Below are positions 2,247-8,268 of a stretch of DNA of 64,000 nt, one piece after another. How positions within the stretch are numbered: the first letter of the stretch is position 1; each line of letters begins with the position of its first letter. The notes beneath the pieces were generated by a model. That model was not told the origin of the DNA, did no database searches, and worked only from the letters and a program-made list of their open reading frames with translations. The stretch lies in sequence record JN849462.1, one strand, 5' to 3'. Both the position numbers and the translations under genes were made by a program.

Positions 2247-2512
2247 TATTCAGCTTCTTTCTCTTTTTCGCCGTCGCCTTCTACAGGGCGTTCAGCTTTA
2301 CCGGTTAGATAAGCGACTTCATCAACATAGTTCTGTAGAGAACTTGCTTTTTCTTGATCGAAGTCTAGCAGTTGAGCTAGTACACCAACGAATTGACCAA
2401 ATGAATTGCGTTCAGCTTGAAGTGCTTCTTGCAAGTCAAATGTACGAACTTTCAGATCTTTGATTTGCGCGTCTTTCTGTTCGATTACTTGTTCTGGAGT
2501 TTGTTGTGACAT
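2246..2512 (-). CDS. 57A: gp57A tail-fibre assembly chaperone
   Basis: Size, MSQQTPEQ start, coiled coil and acidic tail; position between genes 1 and 57B. Confidence 0.7.
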   Translation of the reverse strand: MSQQTPEQVIEQKDAQIKDLKVRTFDLQEALQAERNSFGQFVGVLAQLLDFDQEKASSLQNYVDEVAYLTGKAERPVEGDGEKEKEAE

Positions 2513-2521
2513 TTCTTCACC

Positions 2522-3160
2522 TTAAAATAATTTGTTGATTTGTTCATGTAGTTCTTCAAGAGAACCATTATTGTCTATTTGAATTGCATCTTTGATAAAA
2601 CCCAATTCAGTATCGCTAACGTGATTAGATGCAAGCGAACCTTCTCGGTTAACTTGAAGCATCGTGCCACCAAGCTCTTGTACCAATTCTAATTCGTTTT
2701 GAAAACGAACATCAGTGATTATAAACACCAAATCCGGGTTTTTAAACACTAGCTCATTGTATTTATTACGTGCGTAATTGATCCAATGTTGATCATCAAG
2801 CGAACGTGCAACGTCAGTGCCAGTCATTTGCAGTAAATCACGAATGCTGAACAGTTTCGTGTGAGGGAGCAACGTGTAGTAGACATAATCATAATCAGCG
2901 TCTACATTCGCGTACTCACAACAAGTCAAAACAAGTTCAATTGCTTCGTCGAGGGTAAATGTCGGGACTTCTCTATCAAAATTGTTTTGCCCGTCGATGT
3001 CTGCATACTCATAGCCATATTCTTTCAATCCAATGTACAAACCCTCTTTAATCGGGTCTGCAAACTTGTAAATGTAAGCATTATCACTATGAATATCTTG
3101 AATGGCTTGAGCTACAGTATCTTTGCCTGAGCGTTTTTGTCCATTTATTCCTATTATCAT
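2522..3160 (-). CDS. 1: gp1 deoxynucleoside monophosphate kinase
   Basis: GINGQKRSGKDT P-loop, RDLLQMTGTD and ITDVRFQNE motifs. Confidence 0.92.
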   Translation of the reverse strand: MIIGINGQKRSGKDTVAQAIQDIHSDNAYIYKFADPIKEGLYIGLKEYGYEYADIDGQNNFDREVPTFTLDEAIELVLTCCEYANVDADYDYVYYTLLPHTKLFSIRDLLQMTGTDVARSLDDQHWINYARNKYNELVFKNPDLVFIITDVRFQNELELVQELGGTMLQVNREGSLASNHVSDTELGFIKDAIQIDNNGSLEELHEQINKLF

Positions 3161-3196
3161 AATGAGTTACCAGTCAATAGTGTGTTTCGTCTATTG

Positions 3197-3380
3197 ATTA
3201 TACGACGAAAGTGCTATCTTCTAAACATGCACCAGCCATACTAGTTTCTCTAATATTTCTAATATCCCTAACTTCACTAAAACTACTAATACTACTAAGA
3301 TGATGCCCAATTTTTGGGCCTCAAATCCAAACCTGCCGCTTCGCTCTAGATTTAGATACAAAAAAGCCCCGAAAGGGGCT
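3197..3380 (-). repeat. Conserved intergenic element, copy A: terminator + GC hairpin + six CTAA at 9-bp period + promoter
   Basis: CTAA at 3250, 3259, 3268, 3277, 3286, 3295; terminator hairpin 3365-3380; TTTAGA-N17-TATAAT at 3197-3225. Homologous to copies at about 29.3 kb and 57.4 kb. Confidence 0.8.
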
Positions 3381-3392
3381 TATTGCTTTTTA

Positions 3393-3926
3393 CTAACCCA
3401 TATAGGGTGTGATGACTTCTTCTTTGCCATCGACTTTATGGATCATTTCAAAGTACGAGTATTCAAACTCAACATCACACGTTACAGTTTCAACATCACC
3501 TGCTTCAGTGTAGTTCCATTCAATAGCACTTAGAGACTTTGGAAACGCATTGACAAAGCGATACGTTGCAACAATCTTGTCTTTGTTATTGTCTAAAACA
3601 TGAAGCAACATAGTAACTGGAACAATCCCGTCACTTGTACTAGCACCAGTTGGGTTATTCATGGTGATTAACCACTTGTATAACTCAGCATAAGTACGCA
3701 TTTCTTCATCGACTAGAAACTGAATCGACAGGTCATCGTAAGATGTACCAGAACCTGCTACATGGTTGTTCGCTAGTTTGGCATATTTGGGACCTCGTGT
3801 AATACTTGCAATTTCCATATTAACACCCGGGATAGTGGCAGTTTGAATCTGCCACTGAAACGTTTGTGTTGCGTTGTTATCTGGGATGTCGATTCGGAAA
3901 TTATTCTTCATCGTCAAGTTTTTCAT
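3393..3926 (-). CDS. 3: gp3 tail tube terminator / tail completion protein
   Basis: TIPGV, YDDLSIQFLVDEEM and LHVLDNNK match T4 gp3; 177 aa. Confidence 0.85.
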   Translation of the reverse strand: MKNLTMKNNFRIDIPDNNATQTFQWQIQTATIPGVNMEIASITRGPKYAKLANNHVAGSGTSYDDLSIQFLVDEEMRTYAELYKWLITMNNPTGASTSDGIVPVTMLLHVLDNNKDKIVATYRFVNAFPKSLSAIEWNYTEAGDVETVTCDVEFEYSYFEMIHKVDGKEEVITPYMG

Positions 3927-5896
3927 TAGTTCACGTTACCTCTTGTAGACGGAATCTTAGCTTCACCGCTCGTAGTCAATGGGCGAGTGAAGTTGGTTGT
4001 ATTTTGCACTGAACTTACAGCGTTGTTGACGAAGTTCGTCCCAACTTCTTTTGTTTGTTGTGCTGCTCTGTATGCTGCTTCACGCGCTGCGACAGCTTCT
4101 AAGATCACTGAACGTTTAATCTCTTGGAATGGCTTAATCAACCCTTCTTCAATCATACGTTGTCTCTCAGCAGCAACGATAGCGTCTTCTTGCATTTGTT
4201 TCTTCTCAACTTCAGCCGCTAGGAACTTGTCTAGCGATTCAGTTGAACTTGCTAATGACTCGACTGGTCGTTTGATTGCATCGGCAGCGTTCTTAGCACC
4301 GTCTATAACCGCTTGTGCTGTATTCTTAGCACCGTCTACGATCATATCCCCTGCTTTCCCTAGATAGTCAGTTTGATAGCGTGCATTGAGTCTGTCCTTG
4401 ACTTCAGCCTTGCTTGCGTCAATACGCGCTCGGTTGCCTTCGATGTCTGCGCCAGCAATGAACTTCTCCATGCCTTCTGACTTCAGAAAATCAGGTAGTG
4501 CATTTAATGCATTCACGACGAACTCTTTAACGTTTAACATTAGGTCATCTATTGCTAACATAAGAAGTCTGAATGAGTCGGGGATTGATAGCCAACTTGC
4601 AATGATCTTATTAACCGCATTGACATACATTTGAAACGCACTTCTAACGAAAGAAGTTACCTTCTCGAAGCCAGATACGATTCCCTCAACTGCGCCTTCT
4701 GGTACAGCGTCTTTGATGTTTTCGCCGACGATTCCGAACCATTCACCAATCCCTCGAACCATATCCGTGAACCAGTTCGAGATTATACTGAATAGCATTG
4801 CTCGTTTTTCGGGGTCGCTAAAAATGTTCTTCAGCGCGCCGAAGATTCTGTCTAGCTCTTCTTCGAAGATTTTGTAAATACCATAACCTGCAACCATTGC
4901 AACTAGAGCCGCTGGGTTTAGCATTATCGCAACCATTCTACCTAGACCTAAGAATAATTGACGAACAACAGTCCACATCCATCCTTTTATGGTGCCGCTC
5001 ATATCAGTAGCAAGAGCTTGAACTATATTACCTGTTCCTTTACTAAACTTACCGAACCCTAGAAGAATGTTAGATGCGATTTTACCGAGCGTTCCGAATT
5101 TTGTTGCAGTCGAAGCAGCCATTGCCATTGATGTACTGAATGTCACCAATTGACCGCCTAACATCACTAACCCAACGCCGACAAGTCTGAATAATTTAGC
5201 AATCCATCCTAGTTTTTCACCAGCAAGGTGATTCGCGATACGTCGCAGATCACTAGCTTGATTGCGCTGAACTTTCATATTCTCTTTGTAGCGTAGTTGT
5301 TCAGTCTTACGATTGCGAGTTTCGGTAACGACTTGATACGCGAAAATTTTCTTGTACAATGCGCTTATAAAGCCCACAGTCAACGGGGCGTTGTTACCCG
5401 CACCGTTCTGTAGAAAACTGTTTAAATCGTCGGCAGCCGTCTTCTGAAGCCCTATAACGCGCTTCATGTCGTTGACTCTAAAGATCAGACGTTCAAACCA
5501 ACGATTAAAGCCCTCCTGCATACGTGCGAACTGCATTTTTGCAGTTAAGCGCATTTCTTGAATGCCACGATCAATACGAGACAAATGTCCTTTAAAGTCA
5601 AGAGTAGTCTTGATAATATCCGTTAGTGATATAATCGAAGCACGAACTTTATTGGAAGTTTGCTCAAAGTTTTCGATAACGCGCTGAAACAGATTCTTTT
5701 GCTGCGCCACCGCCTTTTCGTTTGTTTTAAACACCGACTGCATAGTTTCGAGCATAGACGTGGTCGTAATATCAATGTTGTTGATATGACGAGCGACGCG
5801 CTGCATCGTATAAACTTCAGGTCGGTCTTCTTGTTGGAGAATGATATGATCTAATCTTCCGATTATCTCATTCATTTTCTTGTCGTCAGCCGCCAT
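3926..5896 (-). CDS. 29: gp29-like tape measure / baseplate hub protein
   Basis: 656 aa, largely helical and Ala/Gly-rich with hydrophobic stretches; follows the gp26/gp51 chaperone genes. Confidence 0.6.
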   Translation of the reverse strand: MAADDKKMNEIIGRLDHIILQQEDRPEVYTMQRVARHINNIDITTTSMLETMQSVFKTNEKAVAQQKNLFQRVIENFEQTSNKVRASIISLTDIIKTTLDFKGHLSRIDRGIQEMRLTAKMQFARMQEGFNRWFERLIFRVNDMKRVIGLQKTAADDLNSFLQNGAGNNAPLTVGFISALYKKIFAYQVVTETRNRKTEQLRYKENMKVQRNQASDLRRIANHLAGEKLGWIAKLFRLVGVGLVMLGGQLVTFSTSMAMAASTATKFGTLGKIASNILLGFGKFSKGTGNIVQALATDMSGTIKGWMWTVVRQLFLGLGRMVAIMLNPAALVAMVAGYGIYKIFEEELDRIFGALKNIFSDPEKRAMLFSIISNWFTDMVRGIGEWFGIVGENIKDAVPEGAVEGIVSGFEKVTSFVRSAFQMYVNAVNKIIASWLSIPDSFRLLMLAIDDLMLNVKEFVVNALNALPDFLKSEGMEKFIAGADIEGNRARIDASKAEVKDRLNARYQTDYLGKAGDMIVDGAKNTAQAVIDGAKNAADAIKRPVESLASSTESLDKFLAAEVEKKQMQEDAIVAAERQRMIEEGLIKPFQEIKRSVILEAVAAREAAYRAAQQTKEVGTNFVNNAVSSVQNTTNFTRPLTTSGEAKIPSTRGNVN

Positions 5897-6063
5897 TATT
5901 GTTGTTCCTTATTCTTTTCTTGAATGTAATGTATAAGCTGTGCGGCATAGATTTCACGCTCGAATAGAACCATCGTTTCTAAGTCGTGAAGAGAAAAATT
6001 GCCATGAGTGATCATGGCAAAGTTTTCCTTGTAATACTCTTCGAGTGAGTATCTACCGAGCAT
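5896..6063 (-). CDS. 51: Small gp51-like ORF (55 aa, MLGRYSLEEYYKENFAMITHG...)
   Basis: Manually translated; TAATG overlaps at both ends; resembles the C-terminal part of T4 gp51. Not in the ORF track. Confidence 0.7.
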   Translation of the reverse strand: MLGRYSLEEYYKENFAMITHGNFSLHDLETMVLFEREIYAAQLIHYIQEKNKEQQ

Positions 6064-6911
6064 TATACGAAAAAATCTTCGATGCCTCTTAGCGTAACTT
6101 TCTCGTGATTACCACACTTAGGACATTTAACGTCAACGTATGTCGTAATTCGTGGAACTGAATCGACGAATGTCTGAACTTTTTTGAATGCTGCCGTATC
6201 AAGTTCGCCCATGATGTTCACAAGCTGACCTTGCTCTTCAAGTTCTTCTTTGGTGTAAACAGTATCACCAACATGAACTTCTTTAATTGATTCAACCGCA
6301 ATATTGAACAGACCTTGTGGTGTATTCGGGTCGTTGTTCTCATACACTCGAATTGTCGGGTGTTGGAGTTTGATAACAACTTTTGGGTTGACTCGAACTG
6401 TATCTTCACCTGTAAATTCAGGCACGAATGCAGCTTTCAAGTCGATATTGGTTCTGATACGTTCACCGCATAAGTGCTTCTCAGGTGCAAACACTGCTTC
6501 AATCGCTTCTTCGTTTGATTGATTCATAATCTCGGCAAAAATATCATCAGCCGATTTAGCCAGTTCAGCCTCTTCTTCTTCAGAAAGCTTTTGAAGTTCT
6601 TCTTCTGACTTCGGAGCACAGCAGTTGTATTCTGCTTGAATGTTAGTCACACCGTTACTGTTCATATACATATGCAGAAACAGATACTCAGAGTCACCAA
6701 CCGTTAGGTCATCCATTTTGATGTCAGATACAATGCAGTTTTCAAGACACTGTTCGATTGCGTCAATCTTCTCATCAGATTCATTTGCGATAAGCAATGC
6801 TTTATGCTCTTTTGCAAGCATTGCACGCAGTTTAATTTCTTCACCAGTTGATGGTAGTTTTACAGTATATTGTGGCGCAGCAAGTACGCTAATATCAAAT
6901 GCTTTAGTCAT
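6063..6911 (-). CDS. 26: gp26 baseplate hub assembly chaperone
   Basis: VKLPSTGEEIKLRAM, GDSEYLFLHM and the CPKC...LRGIEDFF C-terminus match gp26. Confidence 0.8.
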   Translation of the reverse strand: MTKAFDISVLAAPQYTVKLPSTGEEIKLRAMLAKEHKALLIANESDEKIDAIEQCLENCIVSDIKMDDLTVGDSEYLFLHMYMNSNGVTNIQAEYNCCAPKSEEELQKLSEEEEAELAKSADDIFAEIMNQSNEEAIEAVFAPEKHLCGERIRTNIDLKAAFVPEFTGEDTVRVNPKVVIKLQHPTIRVYENNDPNTPQGLFNIAVESIKEVHVGDTVYTKEELEEQGQLVNIMGELDTAAFKKVQTFVDSVPRITTYVDVKCPKCGNHEKVTLRGIEDFFV

Positions 6912-6922
6912 GATGTTTTACC

Positions 6923-7669
6923 TTAGAATAGACCTGAAATGGCTTCAGCGCCTGTATTGAAAAAGCTGTTATATGTTTTCTCGAAGTTTTGAGTAATACC
7001 CAGTTTATCCGAGATTGTGCTTGATAGATCTTCAGTCATGTATGTTGCGCTTTCGTAAACAAACTCGACTTCGAATTCAGCCACTGCGTTGTTATTCTCG
7101 TATCCTAACTGAACCCCACCTACTCGAATCGGATACGCATTCTTCAAGCTAGTCATCGTAACCATTTCTGCGTTACGATTGTATGTGTAAATCTCAATTG
7201 TTCGAGCATAGTTCGAGAAGAAACCGACTTGAGCAGAATCATTTGAATAAATCTGCTTAAACCAACCAAGTAACATTTTACGTTCTGGGTGTGTTGGTGA
7301 CAGATACAATGACATGGTCACTGTTTCGTCGGTTTTCGCTTTTACTACGTGATGTGGCTTACGTCTAGTTTTATCTACGTCAGTTTCGTATGACGACCCT
7401 GGGATGTTAACAGATTTCACCATCATTCCGATGTTTCGTTCGAACTCAAATCCTGAGCCGAAAAGAGAAGCAGTTGACGCAAGGGCATCTTGTACCCCTA
7501 CGCCTTTGATGTCTGAAAAGTCAGCATTCAAAAATGCCTCACCTGTATTCATCAACTGCTTTGCTGTATCTTGTAGCGATGCAAATCGCACCGCATACAA
7601 GTTTTGTCTGGCTAAGTCGTTCTTTGTAATTTGAGATAAGAACTTCTTAACATCTATTCCGATTGCCAT
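6923..7669 (-). CDS. 54: gp54 baseplate tail-tube initiator
   Basis: DLARQNLYAVRF, VKSVNIPG and FEVEFVY tube-fold motifs. Confidence 0.75.
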   Translation of the reverse strand: MAIGIDVKKFLSQITKNDLARQNLYAVRFASLQDTAKQLMNTGEAFLNADFSDIKGVGVQDALASTASLFGSGFEFERNIGMMVKSVNIPGSSYETDVDKTRRKPHHVVKAKTDETVTMSLYLSPTHPERKMLLGWFKQIYSNDSAQVGFFSNYARTIEIYTYNRNAEMVTMTSLKNAYPIRVGGVQLGYENNNAVAEFEVEFVYESATYMTEDLSSTISDKLGITQNFEKTYNSFFNTGAEAISGLF

Positions 7670-7672
7670 TCG

Positions 7673-8268
7673 TTATCTCCTTCTATAACGATCATCGTAA
7701 GCACGAACAGCAGAAATGTTGCGACCATTTTTAGCAACGAATTGTTGCAATGGCATGTGAATAACGTTGTACCAGTCATGTGGCTTGACTTCTTCAAGCG
7801 ACCCTTTAATTCGCTTGAGAATGTATAATTTCACCATATGTTTACTGAACTTGATGTTTTTCACTCGACCCCAATCGATCATTAATCGTGTGGAGTTGCT
7901 CACTGTTTTCGTGTTAGCATATCTAAGTAATGTGGTTAAAAATTTCTCGCGATCTTTGGGTGGGATGTAATGCAAGTTCAAGCCTAGCATATAGCCTTTT
8001 TGTTGCCCCAAGCAGATGATGCACGGAAATTTATCCCAGTATGGTAACTGGTGTTTAGTTTTTGCGTCGTACGCGAAAACATACATGTTGCCTTTGTGAG
8101 GAACTTGCACTTTTCGACTACGAATTGCATCATGAACGCGCTTTTTGAACCACGCCAGTGATTTGCGCTGATTCTTTGCAATTGGAGTACGACCAAGCTC
8201 GTGTGTTTGAGCCTTGAAGCTATCAAGAAGACTTTCTTTTTCTTCTTTGCTCTTTCTGGTCTAGCCAT
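7673..8268 (-). CDS. 2: gp2 DNA end protector, apparently split by a 1-nt frameshift near 8246
   Basis: MYVFAYDAK, YWDKFP and GLNLHYIPP are gp2 motifs. The gp2 frame is open from 8260, but the coupled ATG at 8268 is in another frame. Confidence 0.8.

What the first reader, a model, noticed from the sequence alone, without database searches (positions are those of the whole stretch)
5896..6075. Candidate -1 programmed frameshift fusing gp26 to a gp51-like ORF upstream of the tape-measure gene
gp26 ends GAT-TTT-TTC-GTA-TAA. The heptamer T-TTT-TTC (6069-6075) fits the X-XXY-YYZ slippery pattern, and the -1 frame reads FFRIMLGRYSLEEYY straight into the unannotated 55-aa ORF. This matches the established lambda G/GT tail-assembly-chaperone layout, directly before the tape-measure gene. 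T4 has separate gp26 and gp51, with gp51 being a gp26-like domain plus this small domain. Inference: T4's pair may be a duplicated, hard-wired version of a frameshifted ancestor.
Basis: partly seen in the sequence, partly recalled or inferred. Interest (0 to 1): 0.75.

Follow-up and report, generated by a model that had tools for sequence, protein, structure and literature searches.

The report
Frameshifted tail-chaperone gene pair, already described
This Vibrio phage almost certainly makes a short and a long tail-assembly chaperone from one gene by letting ribosomes slip back one base at a run of T's; the signal is conserved across hundreds of distant T4-like phages, but a 2022 paper appears to have described it already.

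Summary
The window is Vibrio phage phi-pp2 (KVP40 group). On the minus strand, the gp26-like gene (6063-6911) carries an in-phase T_TTT_TTC heptamer (6069-6075) one codon before its stop. The -1 frame runs open from there through the 55-aa ORF to 5896.

One sequence proves little, but comparison is decisive:
- All 87 diverged loci examined keep T_TTT_TTN at this spot, held at synonymous sites.
- The -1 frame stays open for 53-70 codons in 85 of 85 loci.
- 33 of 85 have no start codon at all for the downstream domain.
- The two pieces match, in order, the N- and C-terminal parts of single-frame gp51 in T4-type phages (RB9, phiP4-3, JC221). Those phages have no T-run at the junction.

A Shine-Dalgarno-like motif 9-10 nt upstream is also favoured at synonymous sites. 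No family-wide downstream RNA structure exists.

It is not new. Vladimirov, Gautam and Davidson (Virology 2022) identified gp26/gp51 as the T4-like tail assembly chaperones, and citing papers report both the poly-T slip sites and T4's two-gene solution.

Calling the downstream 656-aa protein a tape measure rests on position only. Public annotations still lack the joined product.

The parts
6063..6911 (-). gp26-like gene, the short chaperone form (TAC-N), 282 aa including its TAA stop at 6063-6065
   Evidence: ORF list. PF12322 T4_baseplate 3e-49 over residues 13-281. phrog_150 'baseplate hub' 8.5e-56, profile columns 4-232 of 282. AlphaFold2 model mean pLDDT 95.9.
6085..6089 (-). Shine-Dalgarno-like AGAGG, 9 nt upstream of the heptamer; candidate frameshift stimulator
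   Evidence: Sequence. Across 87 loci, SD-like 4-mers start 12-15 nt upstream of the heptamer. The Glu codon there is GAG in 53% against 21% background, and the Gly codon is GGA in 41% against 28%.
6069..6075 (-). Slippery heptamer T_TTT_TTC in the gp26 frame
   Evidence: Conserved as T_TTT_TTC (61 loci), T_TTT_TTT (23) or T_TTT_TTA (3) in 87 of 87 loci, 0-8 codons before the stop. Synonymous-site test.
5896..6069 (-). -1 frame extension (57 sense codons plus stop), homologous to the C-terminal domain of T4-type gp51; contains the 55-aa ORF whose ATG is at 6061-6063
   Evidence: phrog_634 'baseplate hub assembly catalyst' 3e-20, profile columns 59-113 of 121. BLASTP to phiP4-3 gp51 residues 210-249. 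A profile of 51 such pieces aligns to RB9 gp51 residues 206-244.
6032..6065 (-). Predicted stem (8 bp) starting 3 nt after the heptamer; its 5' arm holds the gp26 stop and the small-ORF ATG
   Evidence: RNA fold of 5980-6075 (minus strand): -25.1 kcal/mol, z = -4.19. Both arms are invariant in 7 KVP40-clade phages, so there is no covariation evidence. Not conserved family-wide.
5999..6020 (-). 9-bp hairpin followed by a T-rich tract, inside the small ORF
   Evidence: Invariant in the KVP40 clade. Function untested.
3926..5896 (-). 656-aa protein, putative tape measure; its ATG overlaps the stop of the -1 frame ORF by one base
   Evidence: Position between the chaperone pair and gp3 is conserved in all relatives examined. 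No family, PDB or gp29 match. Only the phiM19 positional equivalent hits tape-measure PHROGs weakly.
6923..7669 (-). Upstream neighbour: gp54/tail-tube-like protein (248 aa)
   Evidence: PF06841 and phrog_45. Annotated as tail tube or baseplate-tail tube initiator in relatives.
3393..3926 (-). Downstream neighbour: gp3 tail completion and sheath stabiliser (177 aa)

Best explanation
Two chaperone forms are made from one gene by a programmed -1 ribosomal frameshift.

Most ribosomes translating the gp26-like gene pass the U_UUU_UUC heptamer, read one more codon and stop, giving the 282-aa short form. A minority slip back one base, with the two Phe-tRNAs re-pairing on UUU UUU. They then read 57 more codons in the -1 frame, giving a long form of about 338 aa. 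Its C-terminal extension is the counterpart of the C-terminal domain of T4-type gp51.

The pair corresponds to lambda G/GT and to T4 gp26/gp51. These are hub or tail assembly chaperones needed to build the tail around the large protein encoded next, and they are absent from the finished particle. In T4-type phages the same two forms come from two separate genes.

Shown here: the conserved signal, the open and conserved -1 frame, the lack of start codons in many relatives, and colinearity with gp51.

Inferred: that the slip is ribosomal, its efficiency, the stimulatory role of the upstream SD-like motif and the nearby stop, and the chaperone and tape-measure roles.
For: - Heptamer in phase in 87 of 87 loci.
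- The preceding codon is always NNT and the first Phe codon always TTT. P is about 3e-9 over 26 clusters. By contrast, only 6 of 88 other Phe-Phe dipeptides in the same genes are T_TTT_TTY.
- Three loci changed the second residue to Leu but kept a slippery T_TTT_TTA.
- The -1 frame is open for 53-70 codons in 85 of 85 loci.
- 33 of 85 loci have no start codon for the small domain.
- The -1 frame peptide is conserved and gap-free from its first codon.
- 162 of 166 family proteins end 0-8 residues after F[FL].
- There is only one PF12322 gene per genome in frameshift-type phages, so no other gene can supply a long form.
- The gp26 profile aligns to RB9 gp51 residues 6-185 and the -1 piece profile to residues 206-244. 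PHROG and Pfam give the same order.
- T4-type gp51 has no T-run at the junction.
- The SD-like motif is enriched at synonymous sites 9-10 nt upstream.
- In the KVP40 clade, synonymous change in the small ORF is about 0.15, against 0.37-0.43 in the body of gp26.
- Literature: gp26 and gp51 are hub assembly chaperones, and gp51 is absent from virions (PMC3004832). Poly-T slip sites are reported in TAC-N genes of T4-like phages (PMC12846349 citing Vladimirov 2022).
Against: - No expression data of any kind were available.
- The window's small ORF has its own ATG in a TAATG overlap, so a free 55-aa product is possible here.
- No conserved downstream RNA structure exists across the family. The local structure in the KVP40 clade has no covariation support.
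- The gp26 fold has no significant match to solved tail assembly chaperones. HK97 2OB9 appears only at E = 1.4, probability 0.11.
- The 656-aa neighbour cannot be shown to be a tape measure by sequence.
Confidence: 0.8

Rival explanations
1. Two separate proteins only. Ribosomes finishing gp26 at TAA re-initiate at the overlapping ATG (TAATG), making a free 55-aa protein. The heptamer is just the codons of a conserved Phe-Phe motif.
For: The window and all 7 KVP40-clade phages have the ATG in a 1-nt stop/start overlap. ATGA and TAATG overlaps both place the downstream gene in the -1 frame. Databases annotate two genes.
Against: - 33 of 85 relatives have no start codon, and only 26 have an ATG.
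- Conservation of the -1 peptide begins upstream of the ATG position, directly at the heptamer.
- The synonymous-site constraint on the heptamer cannot be explained by protein conservation.
- No SD lies within 4-14 nt of the ATG, and the ATG sits in a predicted stem.
- The domain is a C-terminal extension, not a free protein, in T4-type gp51.

Re-initiation may still add a third product in this clade.
Confidence: 0.08
2. The long form is made by transcriptional slippage. RNA polymerase adds one extra U in the T-run, and the altered mRNA is read without any ribosomal slip.
For: A homopolymeric T-run is present in all loci, and 23 of 87 have 7-8 T's. No conserved downstream RNA structure exists. 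[quoted passage not shown]
Against: - 64 of 87 loci have only 6 T's. From general knowledge, efficient polymerase slippage needs runs of about 8-9 or more.
- The last position is C in 70% of loci, although TTT is 72% of Phe codons elsewhere in these genes. Selection therefore caps the run instead of lengthening it.
- An SD-like motif at dnaX-like spacing is selected upstream, and that acts on ribosomes.
Confidence: 0.08
3. Chance. An AT-rich genome gives a T-run at a Phe-Phe motif with no recoding function.
For: In a single sequence, about 4% of long ORFs have some in-phase heptamer in their last 15 codons.
Against: 87 of 87 loci conserve it, P about 3e-9 at the cluster level. There is also the open -1 frame, the missing start codons and colinearity with gp51.
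Confidence: 0.01

Closest known systems
T4-like phage tail assembly chaperones gp26 (TAC-N) and gp51 (TAC-NC), as described by Vladimirov, Gautam and Davidson, Virology 2022;566:9-15
   Same: Same protein family (PF12322 plus the gp51 C-terminal domain) and the same idea of a short and a long form. Citing papers report poly-T slip signals in the TAC-N genes of T4-like phages, and T4's use of two genes instead.
   Different: Nothing essential. This window is one more member. The paper itself was not held, so I could not check whether KVP40-type phages, the SD-like motif or the start-codon census are in it.
Bacteriophage lambda G/GT tail assembly chaperone frameshift (and the family of such frameshifts in long-tailed phages)
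   Same: A -1 slip on an X_XXY_YYZ heptamer a few codons before the stop of the short form, with a long form extended by a small domain. The gene pair sits between tail tube genes and the large downstream gene. No strong downstream RNA structure is needed (the last point is from general knowledge).
   Different: There is no detectable sequence similarity, and no significant fold similarity to a solved chaperone. The short form is about twice as large and carries four conserved Cys. The heptamer is U_UUU_UUY, not G_GGA_AAG.
T4-type (Tevenvirinae, Bragavirus) gene pair 26 and 51
   Same: gp26 corresponds to the short form. gp51 corresponds to the short-form domain plus the C-terminal domain, colinear with the two pieces here. 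Gene 51 sits at the head of the 27-28-29 (tape measure) block.
   Different: Two separate genes on opposite strands. No T-run at the domain junction and no Phe-Phe motif. Two PF12322 copies per genome instead of one.
E. coli dnaX -1 frameshift
   Same: An internal Shine-Dalgarno-like sequence about 10 nt upstream of the heptamer (spacing from general knowledge). Here the motif ends 9-10 nt upstream and is favoured at synonymous sites.
   Different: dnaX also uses a downstream stem-loop and the heptamer A_AAA_AAG, and its shifted product is the shorter one.

Membership tests
Programmed -1 ribosomal frameshift site (X_XXY_YYZ class) | Heptamer X_XXY_YYZ in the phase of the upstream frame | tested here: met
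   T_TTT_TTC at 6069-6075 on the minus strand.
Programmed -1 ribosomal frameshift site (X_XXY_YYZ class) | Heptamer conserved among relatives beyond what the protein requires | tested here: met
   87 of 87 loci. Synonymous-site P is about 3e-9 over 26 clusters. Other Phe-Phe dipeptides are rarely slippery.
Programmed -1 ribosomal frameshift site (X_XXY_YYZ class) | -1 frame open and coding from the heptamer onward, with no dependence on its own start codon | tested here: met
   Open for 53-70 codons in 85 of 85 loci. No start codon in 33 of 85. The peptide is conserved from its first codon.
Programmed -1 ribosomal frameshift site (X_XXY_YYZ class) | Stimulatory element (downstream structure or upstream SD-like sequence) | tested here: inconclusive
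   The upstream SD-like motif is enriched at synonymous sites. No conserved downstream structure exists. The local fold in the window has z = -4.19 but no covariation.
Programmed -1 ribosomal frameshift site (X_XXY_YYZ class) | Trans-frame protein actually made | not testable with these tools
   No proteomic or ribosome-profiling data were available.
gp26/gp51 family (Pfam PF12322 T4_baseplate; phrog_150 and phrog_634) | Significant match of the upstream ORF to PF12322 | tested here: met
   3e-49, 168 bits against a cut-off of 24.5.
gp26/gp51 family (Pfam PF12322 T4_baseplate; phrog_150 and phrog_634) | Downstream piece matches the C-terminal domain of gp51, colinear with full-length gp51 | tested here: met
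   phrog_634 3e-20. hhalign to RB9 gp51 residues 206-244, with the gp26 profile on residues 6-185.
Lambda-type tail assembly chaperone pair (G/GT) | Gene pair placed after tail tube genes and directly before the tape measure gene | tested here: inconclusive
   The synteny gp54/tube-like, then the pair, then a large protein, then gp3 is conserved. The 656-aa protein has no tape-measure match.
Lambda-type tail assembly chaperone pair (G/GT) | Sequence or fold homology to known chaperone families | tested here: not met
   129 members give no Pfam chaperone hit. Profile search against PDB sequences gives none. Foldseek against PDB has a best E of 0.6, and HK97 chaperone 2OB9 is at E = 1.4, probability 0.11.
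Lambda-type tail assembly chaperone pair (G/GT) | Both forms required for tail assembly and absent from virions | not testable with these tools
   For T4, gp51 is reported as required but absent from the particle (PMC3004832). Nothing is known for this phage.

The most novel reading that the evidence does not exclude
The recoding signal may be a conserved three-part cassette: an SD-like GAGG/AAGG selected at synonymous sites 9-10 nt upstream, U_UUU_UUY, and a zero-frame stop 0-1 codons later, with no downstream RNA structure. It would be ancestral to the whole T4-like superfamily (over 2,000 protein clusters), with T4's two-gene arrangement derived from it. In the KVP40 clade, the retained ATG and the strongly constrained small-ORF RNA could add a third product or a regulatory layer ahead of the putative tape-measure gene. 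Some of this may go beyond the 2022 paper, which I could not read.
Probability: 0.35. Interest if true: 0.4.

Novelty: already known. Interest (0 to 1): 0.3.

Why it matters
It corrects annotation. None of the 14 annotated records of frameshift-type phages that I examined carries the joined product. [quoted passage not shown] The frameshift explains all of these.

It also makes the T4-like phages, long the apparent exception, fit the general rule that long-tailed phages make a short and a long chaperone in a fixed ratio. As a discovery, though, it has been made before.

Tried and rejected
- Rfam scan of 5700-6400 found nothing relevant.
- RNAalifold on 63 representatives, anchored at the heptamer, gave an empty consensus. 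Per-locus fold z-scores were barely below an internal control: mean -1.1 against -0.7.
- Attempts to show the 656-aa protein is a tape measure all failed: Pfam, PHROGs, NCBIfam, PDB sequences, BLASTP against positional equivalents, and tblastn with RB9 gp29, gp27 and gp28.
- Sequence and profile searches of gp26 and of the small domain against PDB gave nothing.
- Foldseek against PDB gave no significant hit. Foldseek against the viral library returned only 'baseplate hub' or unnamed myophage proteins.
- The search for related loci with the single protein gave only 2 loci; the alignment query was needed.
- The search for homologous proteins returned only 17, mostly close, relatives.
- The 2022 Virology paper is not held, so its content is taken from its title and two citing papers.
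- I did not build or search any sequence joining the two frames. The pieces were always handled separately.
Full report
**What the window is.** Bases 3300-7700 are 100% identical to Vibrio phage phi-pp2 and 98.7% identical to KVP40 (genus Schizotequatrovirus, family Straboviridae). All genes discussed lie on the minus strand. In transcription order they are:
- a gp54/tail-tube-like gene (6923-7669);
- the gp26-like gene (6063-6911, 282 aa);
- a 55-aa ORF (5896-6063);
- a 656-aa ORF (3926-5896);
- gp3 (3393-3926).

**The observation.** It is correct.
- The gp26-like gene ends GAT-TTT-TTC-GTA-TAA.
- The heptamer T_TTT_TTC occupies 6069-6075 in the X_XXY_YYZ phase.
- The stop (6063-6065) overlaps the ATG of the 55-aa ORF by one base.
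- That ORF is in the -1 frame, which is open from 6108 to 5896.

The small ORF is not unannotated in the family. KVP40 lists it with a note on its likeness to the C-terminus of T4 gp51, and phi-pp2 lists a 39-aa version.

Taken alone, the heptamer is weak evidence: 2 of 48 long ORFs in the window have some in-phase heptamer in their last 15 codons. T_TTT_TTN is, however, unique among 18,517 in-phase positions. A TAATG or ATGA overlap also puts a downstream gene in the -1 frame, so the frame relation by itself does not separate frameshifting from ordinary translational coupling.

**What the proteins are.**
- The 282-aa protein is a clear member of Pfam PF12322 (T4_baseplate, 3e-49). It matches phrog_150 over profile columns 4-232 of 282.
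- The 55-aa ORF matches phrog_634, 'baseplate hub assembly catalyst' (the name used for gp51), over columns 59-113 of 121.
- In T4-type phages (Tequatrovirus RB9, Bragavirus phiP4-3, Yersinia phage JC221), gp26 (184-208 aa) is PF12322 only. gp51 (247-257 aa) is PF12322 over roughly residues 1-200 plus a C-terminal extension. That extension matches phrog_634 and columns 236-280 of phrog_150.
- A profile of 129 gp26-like proteins aligns to RB9 gp51 residues 6-185 (probability 95%). A profile of 51 of the -1 frame pieces aligns to residues 206-244 (probability 85%).

The two pieces in this window are therefore colinear with one full-length T4-type gp51. I tested it on RB9, phiP4-3 and JC221, not on the T4 record itself.

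**Comparative test of the frameshift.** I collected the gp26 3' junction from:
- the window and KVP40;
- a cyanophage (S-RIM14);
- a Pelagibacter phage (Mosig);
- Sinorhizobium phage phiM19;
- Cronobacter phage S13;
- Aeromonas phages Aeh1 and 65;
- 80 viral metagenome contigs with 23-31% protein identity to the window protein.

Leaving out the near-identical KVP40 locus, 87 loci were counted. They form 26 clusters at 50% protein identity.

Results:
- All 87 loci carry T_TTT_TTN in the gp26 frame: TTC in 61, TTT in 23, TTA in 3.
- The heptamer lies 0-8 codons before the stop. Exactly one codon intervenes in 68 loci and none in 12.
- The -1 frame stays open for 53-70 codons after the heptamer in all 85 loci with enough sequence.
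- The codon before the Phe-Phe motif ends in T in 87 of 87 (AGT, AAT, GAT, TCT, GCT, GGT), and the first Phe codon is TTT in 87 of 87. Given the amino acids and the pooled codon usage of these same genes, the chance for 26 cluster representatives is about 3e-9.
- Elsewhere in the same genes, only 6 of 88 Phe-Phe dipeptides form T_TTT_TTY.
- The final base is C in 70% of loci, although TTC is only 28% of Phe codons in these genes.
- Three loci changed the second Phe to Leu but kept a slippery T_TTT_TTA.
- At the protein level, 162 of 166 family members end 0-8 residues after F[FL]. These members include 150 representatives of clusters at 50% identity, drawn from a family of 2,386 such clusters.

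In the family it cannot be:
- 33 of 85 loci have no ATG, GTG or TTG anywhere in the -1 frame, from the preceding -1 stop to ten codons past the heptamer.
- 26 have only GTG or TTG, often at a conserved Leu codon.
- Only 26 have an ATG.
- Aeh1, phage 65 and Cronobacter S13 are among those with no start. Their records leave the region unannotated or call only a 26-aa fragment.
- The -1 frame peptide aligns without gaps from its very first codon after the heptamer, and conservation begins there.
- Frameshift-type genomes hold only one PF12322 gene, so no second gene could supply a long form.
- In T4-type gp51, where no slip is needed, the junction has neither the T-run nor the Phe-Phe motif.

**Stimulators.**
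- An SD-like purine motif (AGAGG at 6085-6089 in the window) ends 9-10 nt upstream of the heptamer.
- Across the family it arises from a conserved Glu/Lys-Gly pair, but codon choice is skewed towards it. GAG is used in 53% against 21% background, and GGA in 41% against 28%.
- The spacing resembles that of the internal SD of E. coli dnaX (general knowledge).
- No downstream RNA structure is conserved. RNAalifold on 63 representatives gives none, and fold z-scores are close to those of control segments.
- In the window, the 96 nt from the heptamer fold well (z = -4.19). There is an 8-bp stem starting 3 nt after the heptamer that holds the stop and the ATG, and a 9-bp hairpin at 5999-6020.
- In seven KVP40-clade phages, both stems and most of the ~85 nt after the heptamer are invariant; only five positions vary.
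- Synonymous change in the small ORF is about 0.15, against 0.37-0.43 in the body of gp26.
- This suggests an extra RNA-level constraint in this clade. Without covariation, its nature is open.

**Ribosomal or transcriptional slippage.** The T-run has 6 T's in 64 loci, 7 in 10 and 8 in 13. Selection for a terminal C keeps the run short, and an SD-like motif acts on ribosomes. I therefore favour ribosomal slippage. Only RNA and protein data can settle the question.

**Function.**
- In T4, gp26 and gp51 are hub assembly chaperones, and gp51 is required but absent from the particle (PMC3004832). This parallels lambda G and GT.
- The conserved gene order is gp4, gp2, gp54, gp26, small piece, large protein, gp3. 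This places the pair directly before a 567 to over 1,000 aa protein in every relative examined.
- In T4-type phages, gene 51 heads the 27-28-29 block, and gp29 is the tape measure (PF25671).
- The window's 656-aa protein has no detectable similarity to gp29 or to any tape-measure family. Only the phiM19 equivalent hits tape-measure PHROGs weakly. 'Tape measure' is therefore a positional inference.

**Structure.**
- The gp26 model is confident (mean pLDDT 95.9, pTM 0.87).
- It has no significant PDB neighbour. The HK97 tail assembly chaperone appears at rank 15 with E = 1.4 and probability 0.11, which is a hint at most.
- In the viral library, the fold is widespread among large myophages well beyond the T4-like group, including phiRSL1, PaBG, CP220, SP-15 and Ackermannviridae.
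- The element therefore works like a G/GT pair, but membership in the classical chaperone fold family is not shown.

**Novelty.** Full-text searches for gp26, gp51 and frameshift found nothing direct. [quoted passage not shown]
- PRFect summarises it as follows: some T4-like phages carry one short gene and one longer fusion gene instead of frameshifting (PMC10885494).
- A 2025 paper cites it for poly-T slip signals in the TAC-N genes of T4-like phages (PMC12846349).
- The paper itself is not held.

Earlier, Sullivan et al. 2010 noted that cyanophage and marine vibriophage gp51 lack the first ~200 residues, and that gp51 is missing in Aeh1, without proposing a frameshift (PMC3037559). Public annotation has not caught up: none of the 14 annotated records of frameshift-type phages I opened has a joined coding sequence.

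**Direction of evolution.**
- The frameshift type occurs in Kyanoviridae, Emdodecavirus, several Straboviridae genera outside Tevenvirinae (Schizotequatrovirus, Mylasvirus, Cinqassovirus, Ishigurovirus) and many uncultured phages.
- The two-gene type was found in 1,381 records, mainly of enterobacterial, Acinetobacter and some Aeromonas phages.
- This distribution fits a frameshifted ancestor with T4's pair as a later duplication. I built no rooted tree, so this remains an inference.

Noticed in passing
window 5999-6020 (minus strand): A 9-bp hairpin followed by a T-rich tract, scored as terminator-like, lies inside the small ORF about 49 nt 3' of the heptamer. It is invariant in seven KVP40-clade phages. 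It could be an attenuator ahead of the 656-aa gene, part of a frameshift-stimulating fold, or chance.
   Followed up: partly
window 6063-6911 (minus strand), protein residues 97, 148, 263, 266: Four Cys are conserved in 90% or more of 129 family members, and many members give weak zinc-ribbon Pfam hits, suggesting a zinc site in the short chaperone form. The window protein also has an acidic insertion of about 45 residues (roughly 100-145) that most relatives lack.
   Followed up: partly
window 5896-5898 (minus strand): The stop of the -1 frame ORF overlaps the ATG of the 656-aa gene in a second TAATG, with an AAGGAA motif 7 nt upstream. The large gene is therefore in the -1 frame relative to the small ORF and probably has its own initiation.
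   Followed up: no
L011 2501-2674 (Aeromonas phage Aeh1); L012 2501-2671 (phage 65); L008 3723-3893 (Cronobacter phage S13): These genomes carry the gp51 C-terminal domain in the -1 frame with no start codon. It is unannotated or called as a 26-aa fragment. A 2010 comparative study listed gp51 as missing in Aeh1.
   Followed up: yes
L009 (Yersinia phage JC221, MN508817.1) 2392-3682: In this T4-type record, genes 51 and 26 lie head to tail on the same strand with an 8-nt overlap, after gp54. In RB9 and phiP4-3 they are divergently oriented. This is a different local arrangement or an assembly or orientation quirk of a partial genome.
   Followed up: no
structure model m050538e04352 against the viral library: The gp26 fold is found with E < 1e-5 in large myophages far from T4, including Ralstonia phiRSL1, Pseudomonas PaBG, Campylobacter CP220, Bacillus SP-15 and BCD7, Leptospira LE4 and an Ackermannviridae 'cysteine-rich protein'. 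Some of these proteins are 380-670 aa long. Whether they too use a frameshift or are natural fusions was not examined.
   Followed up: no
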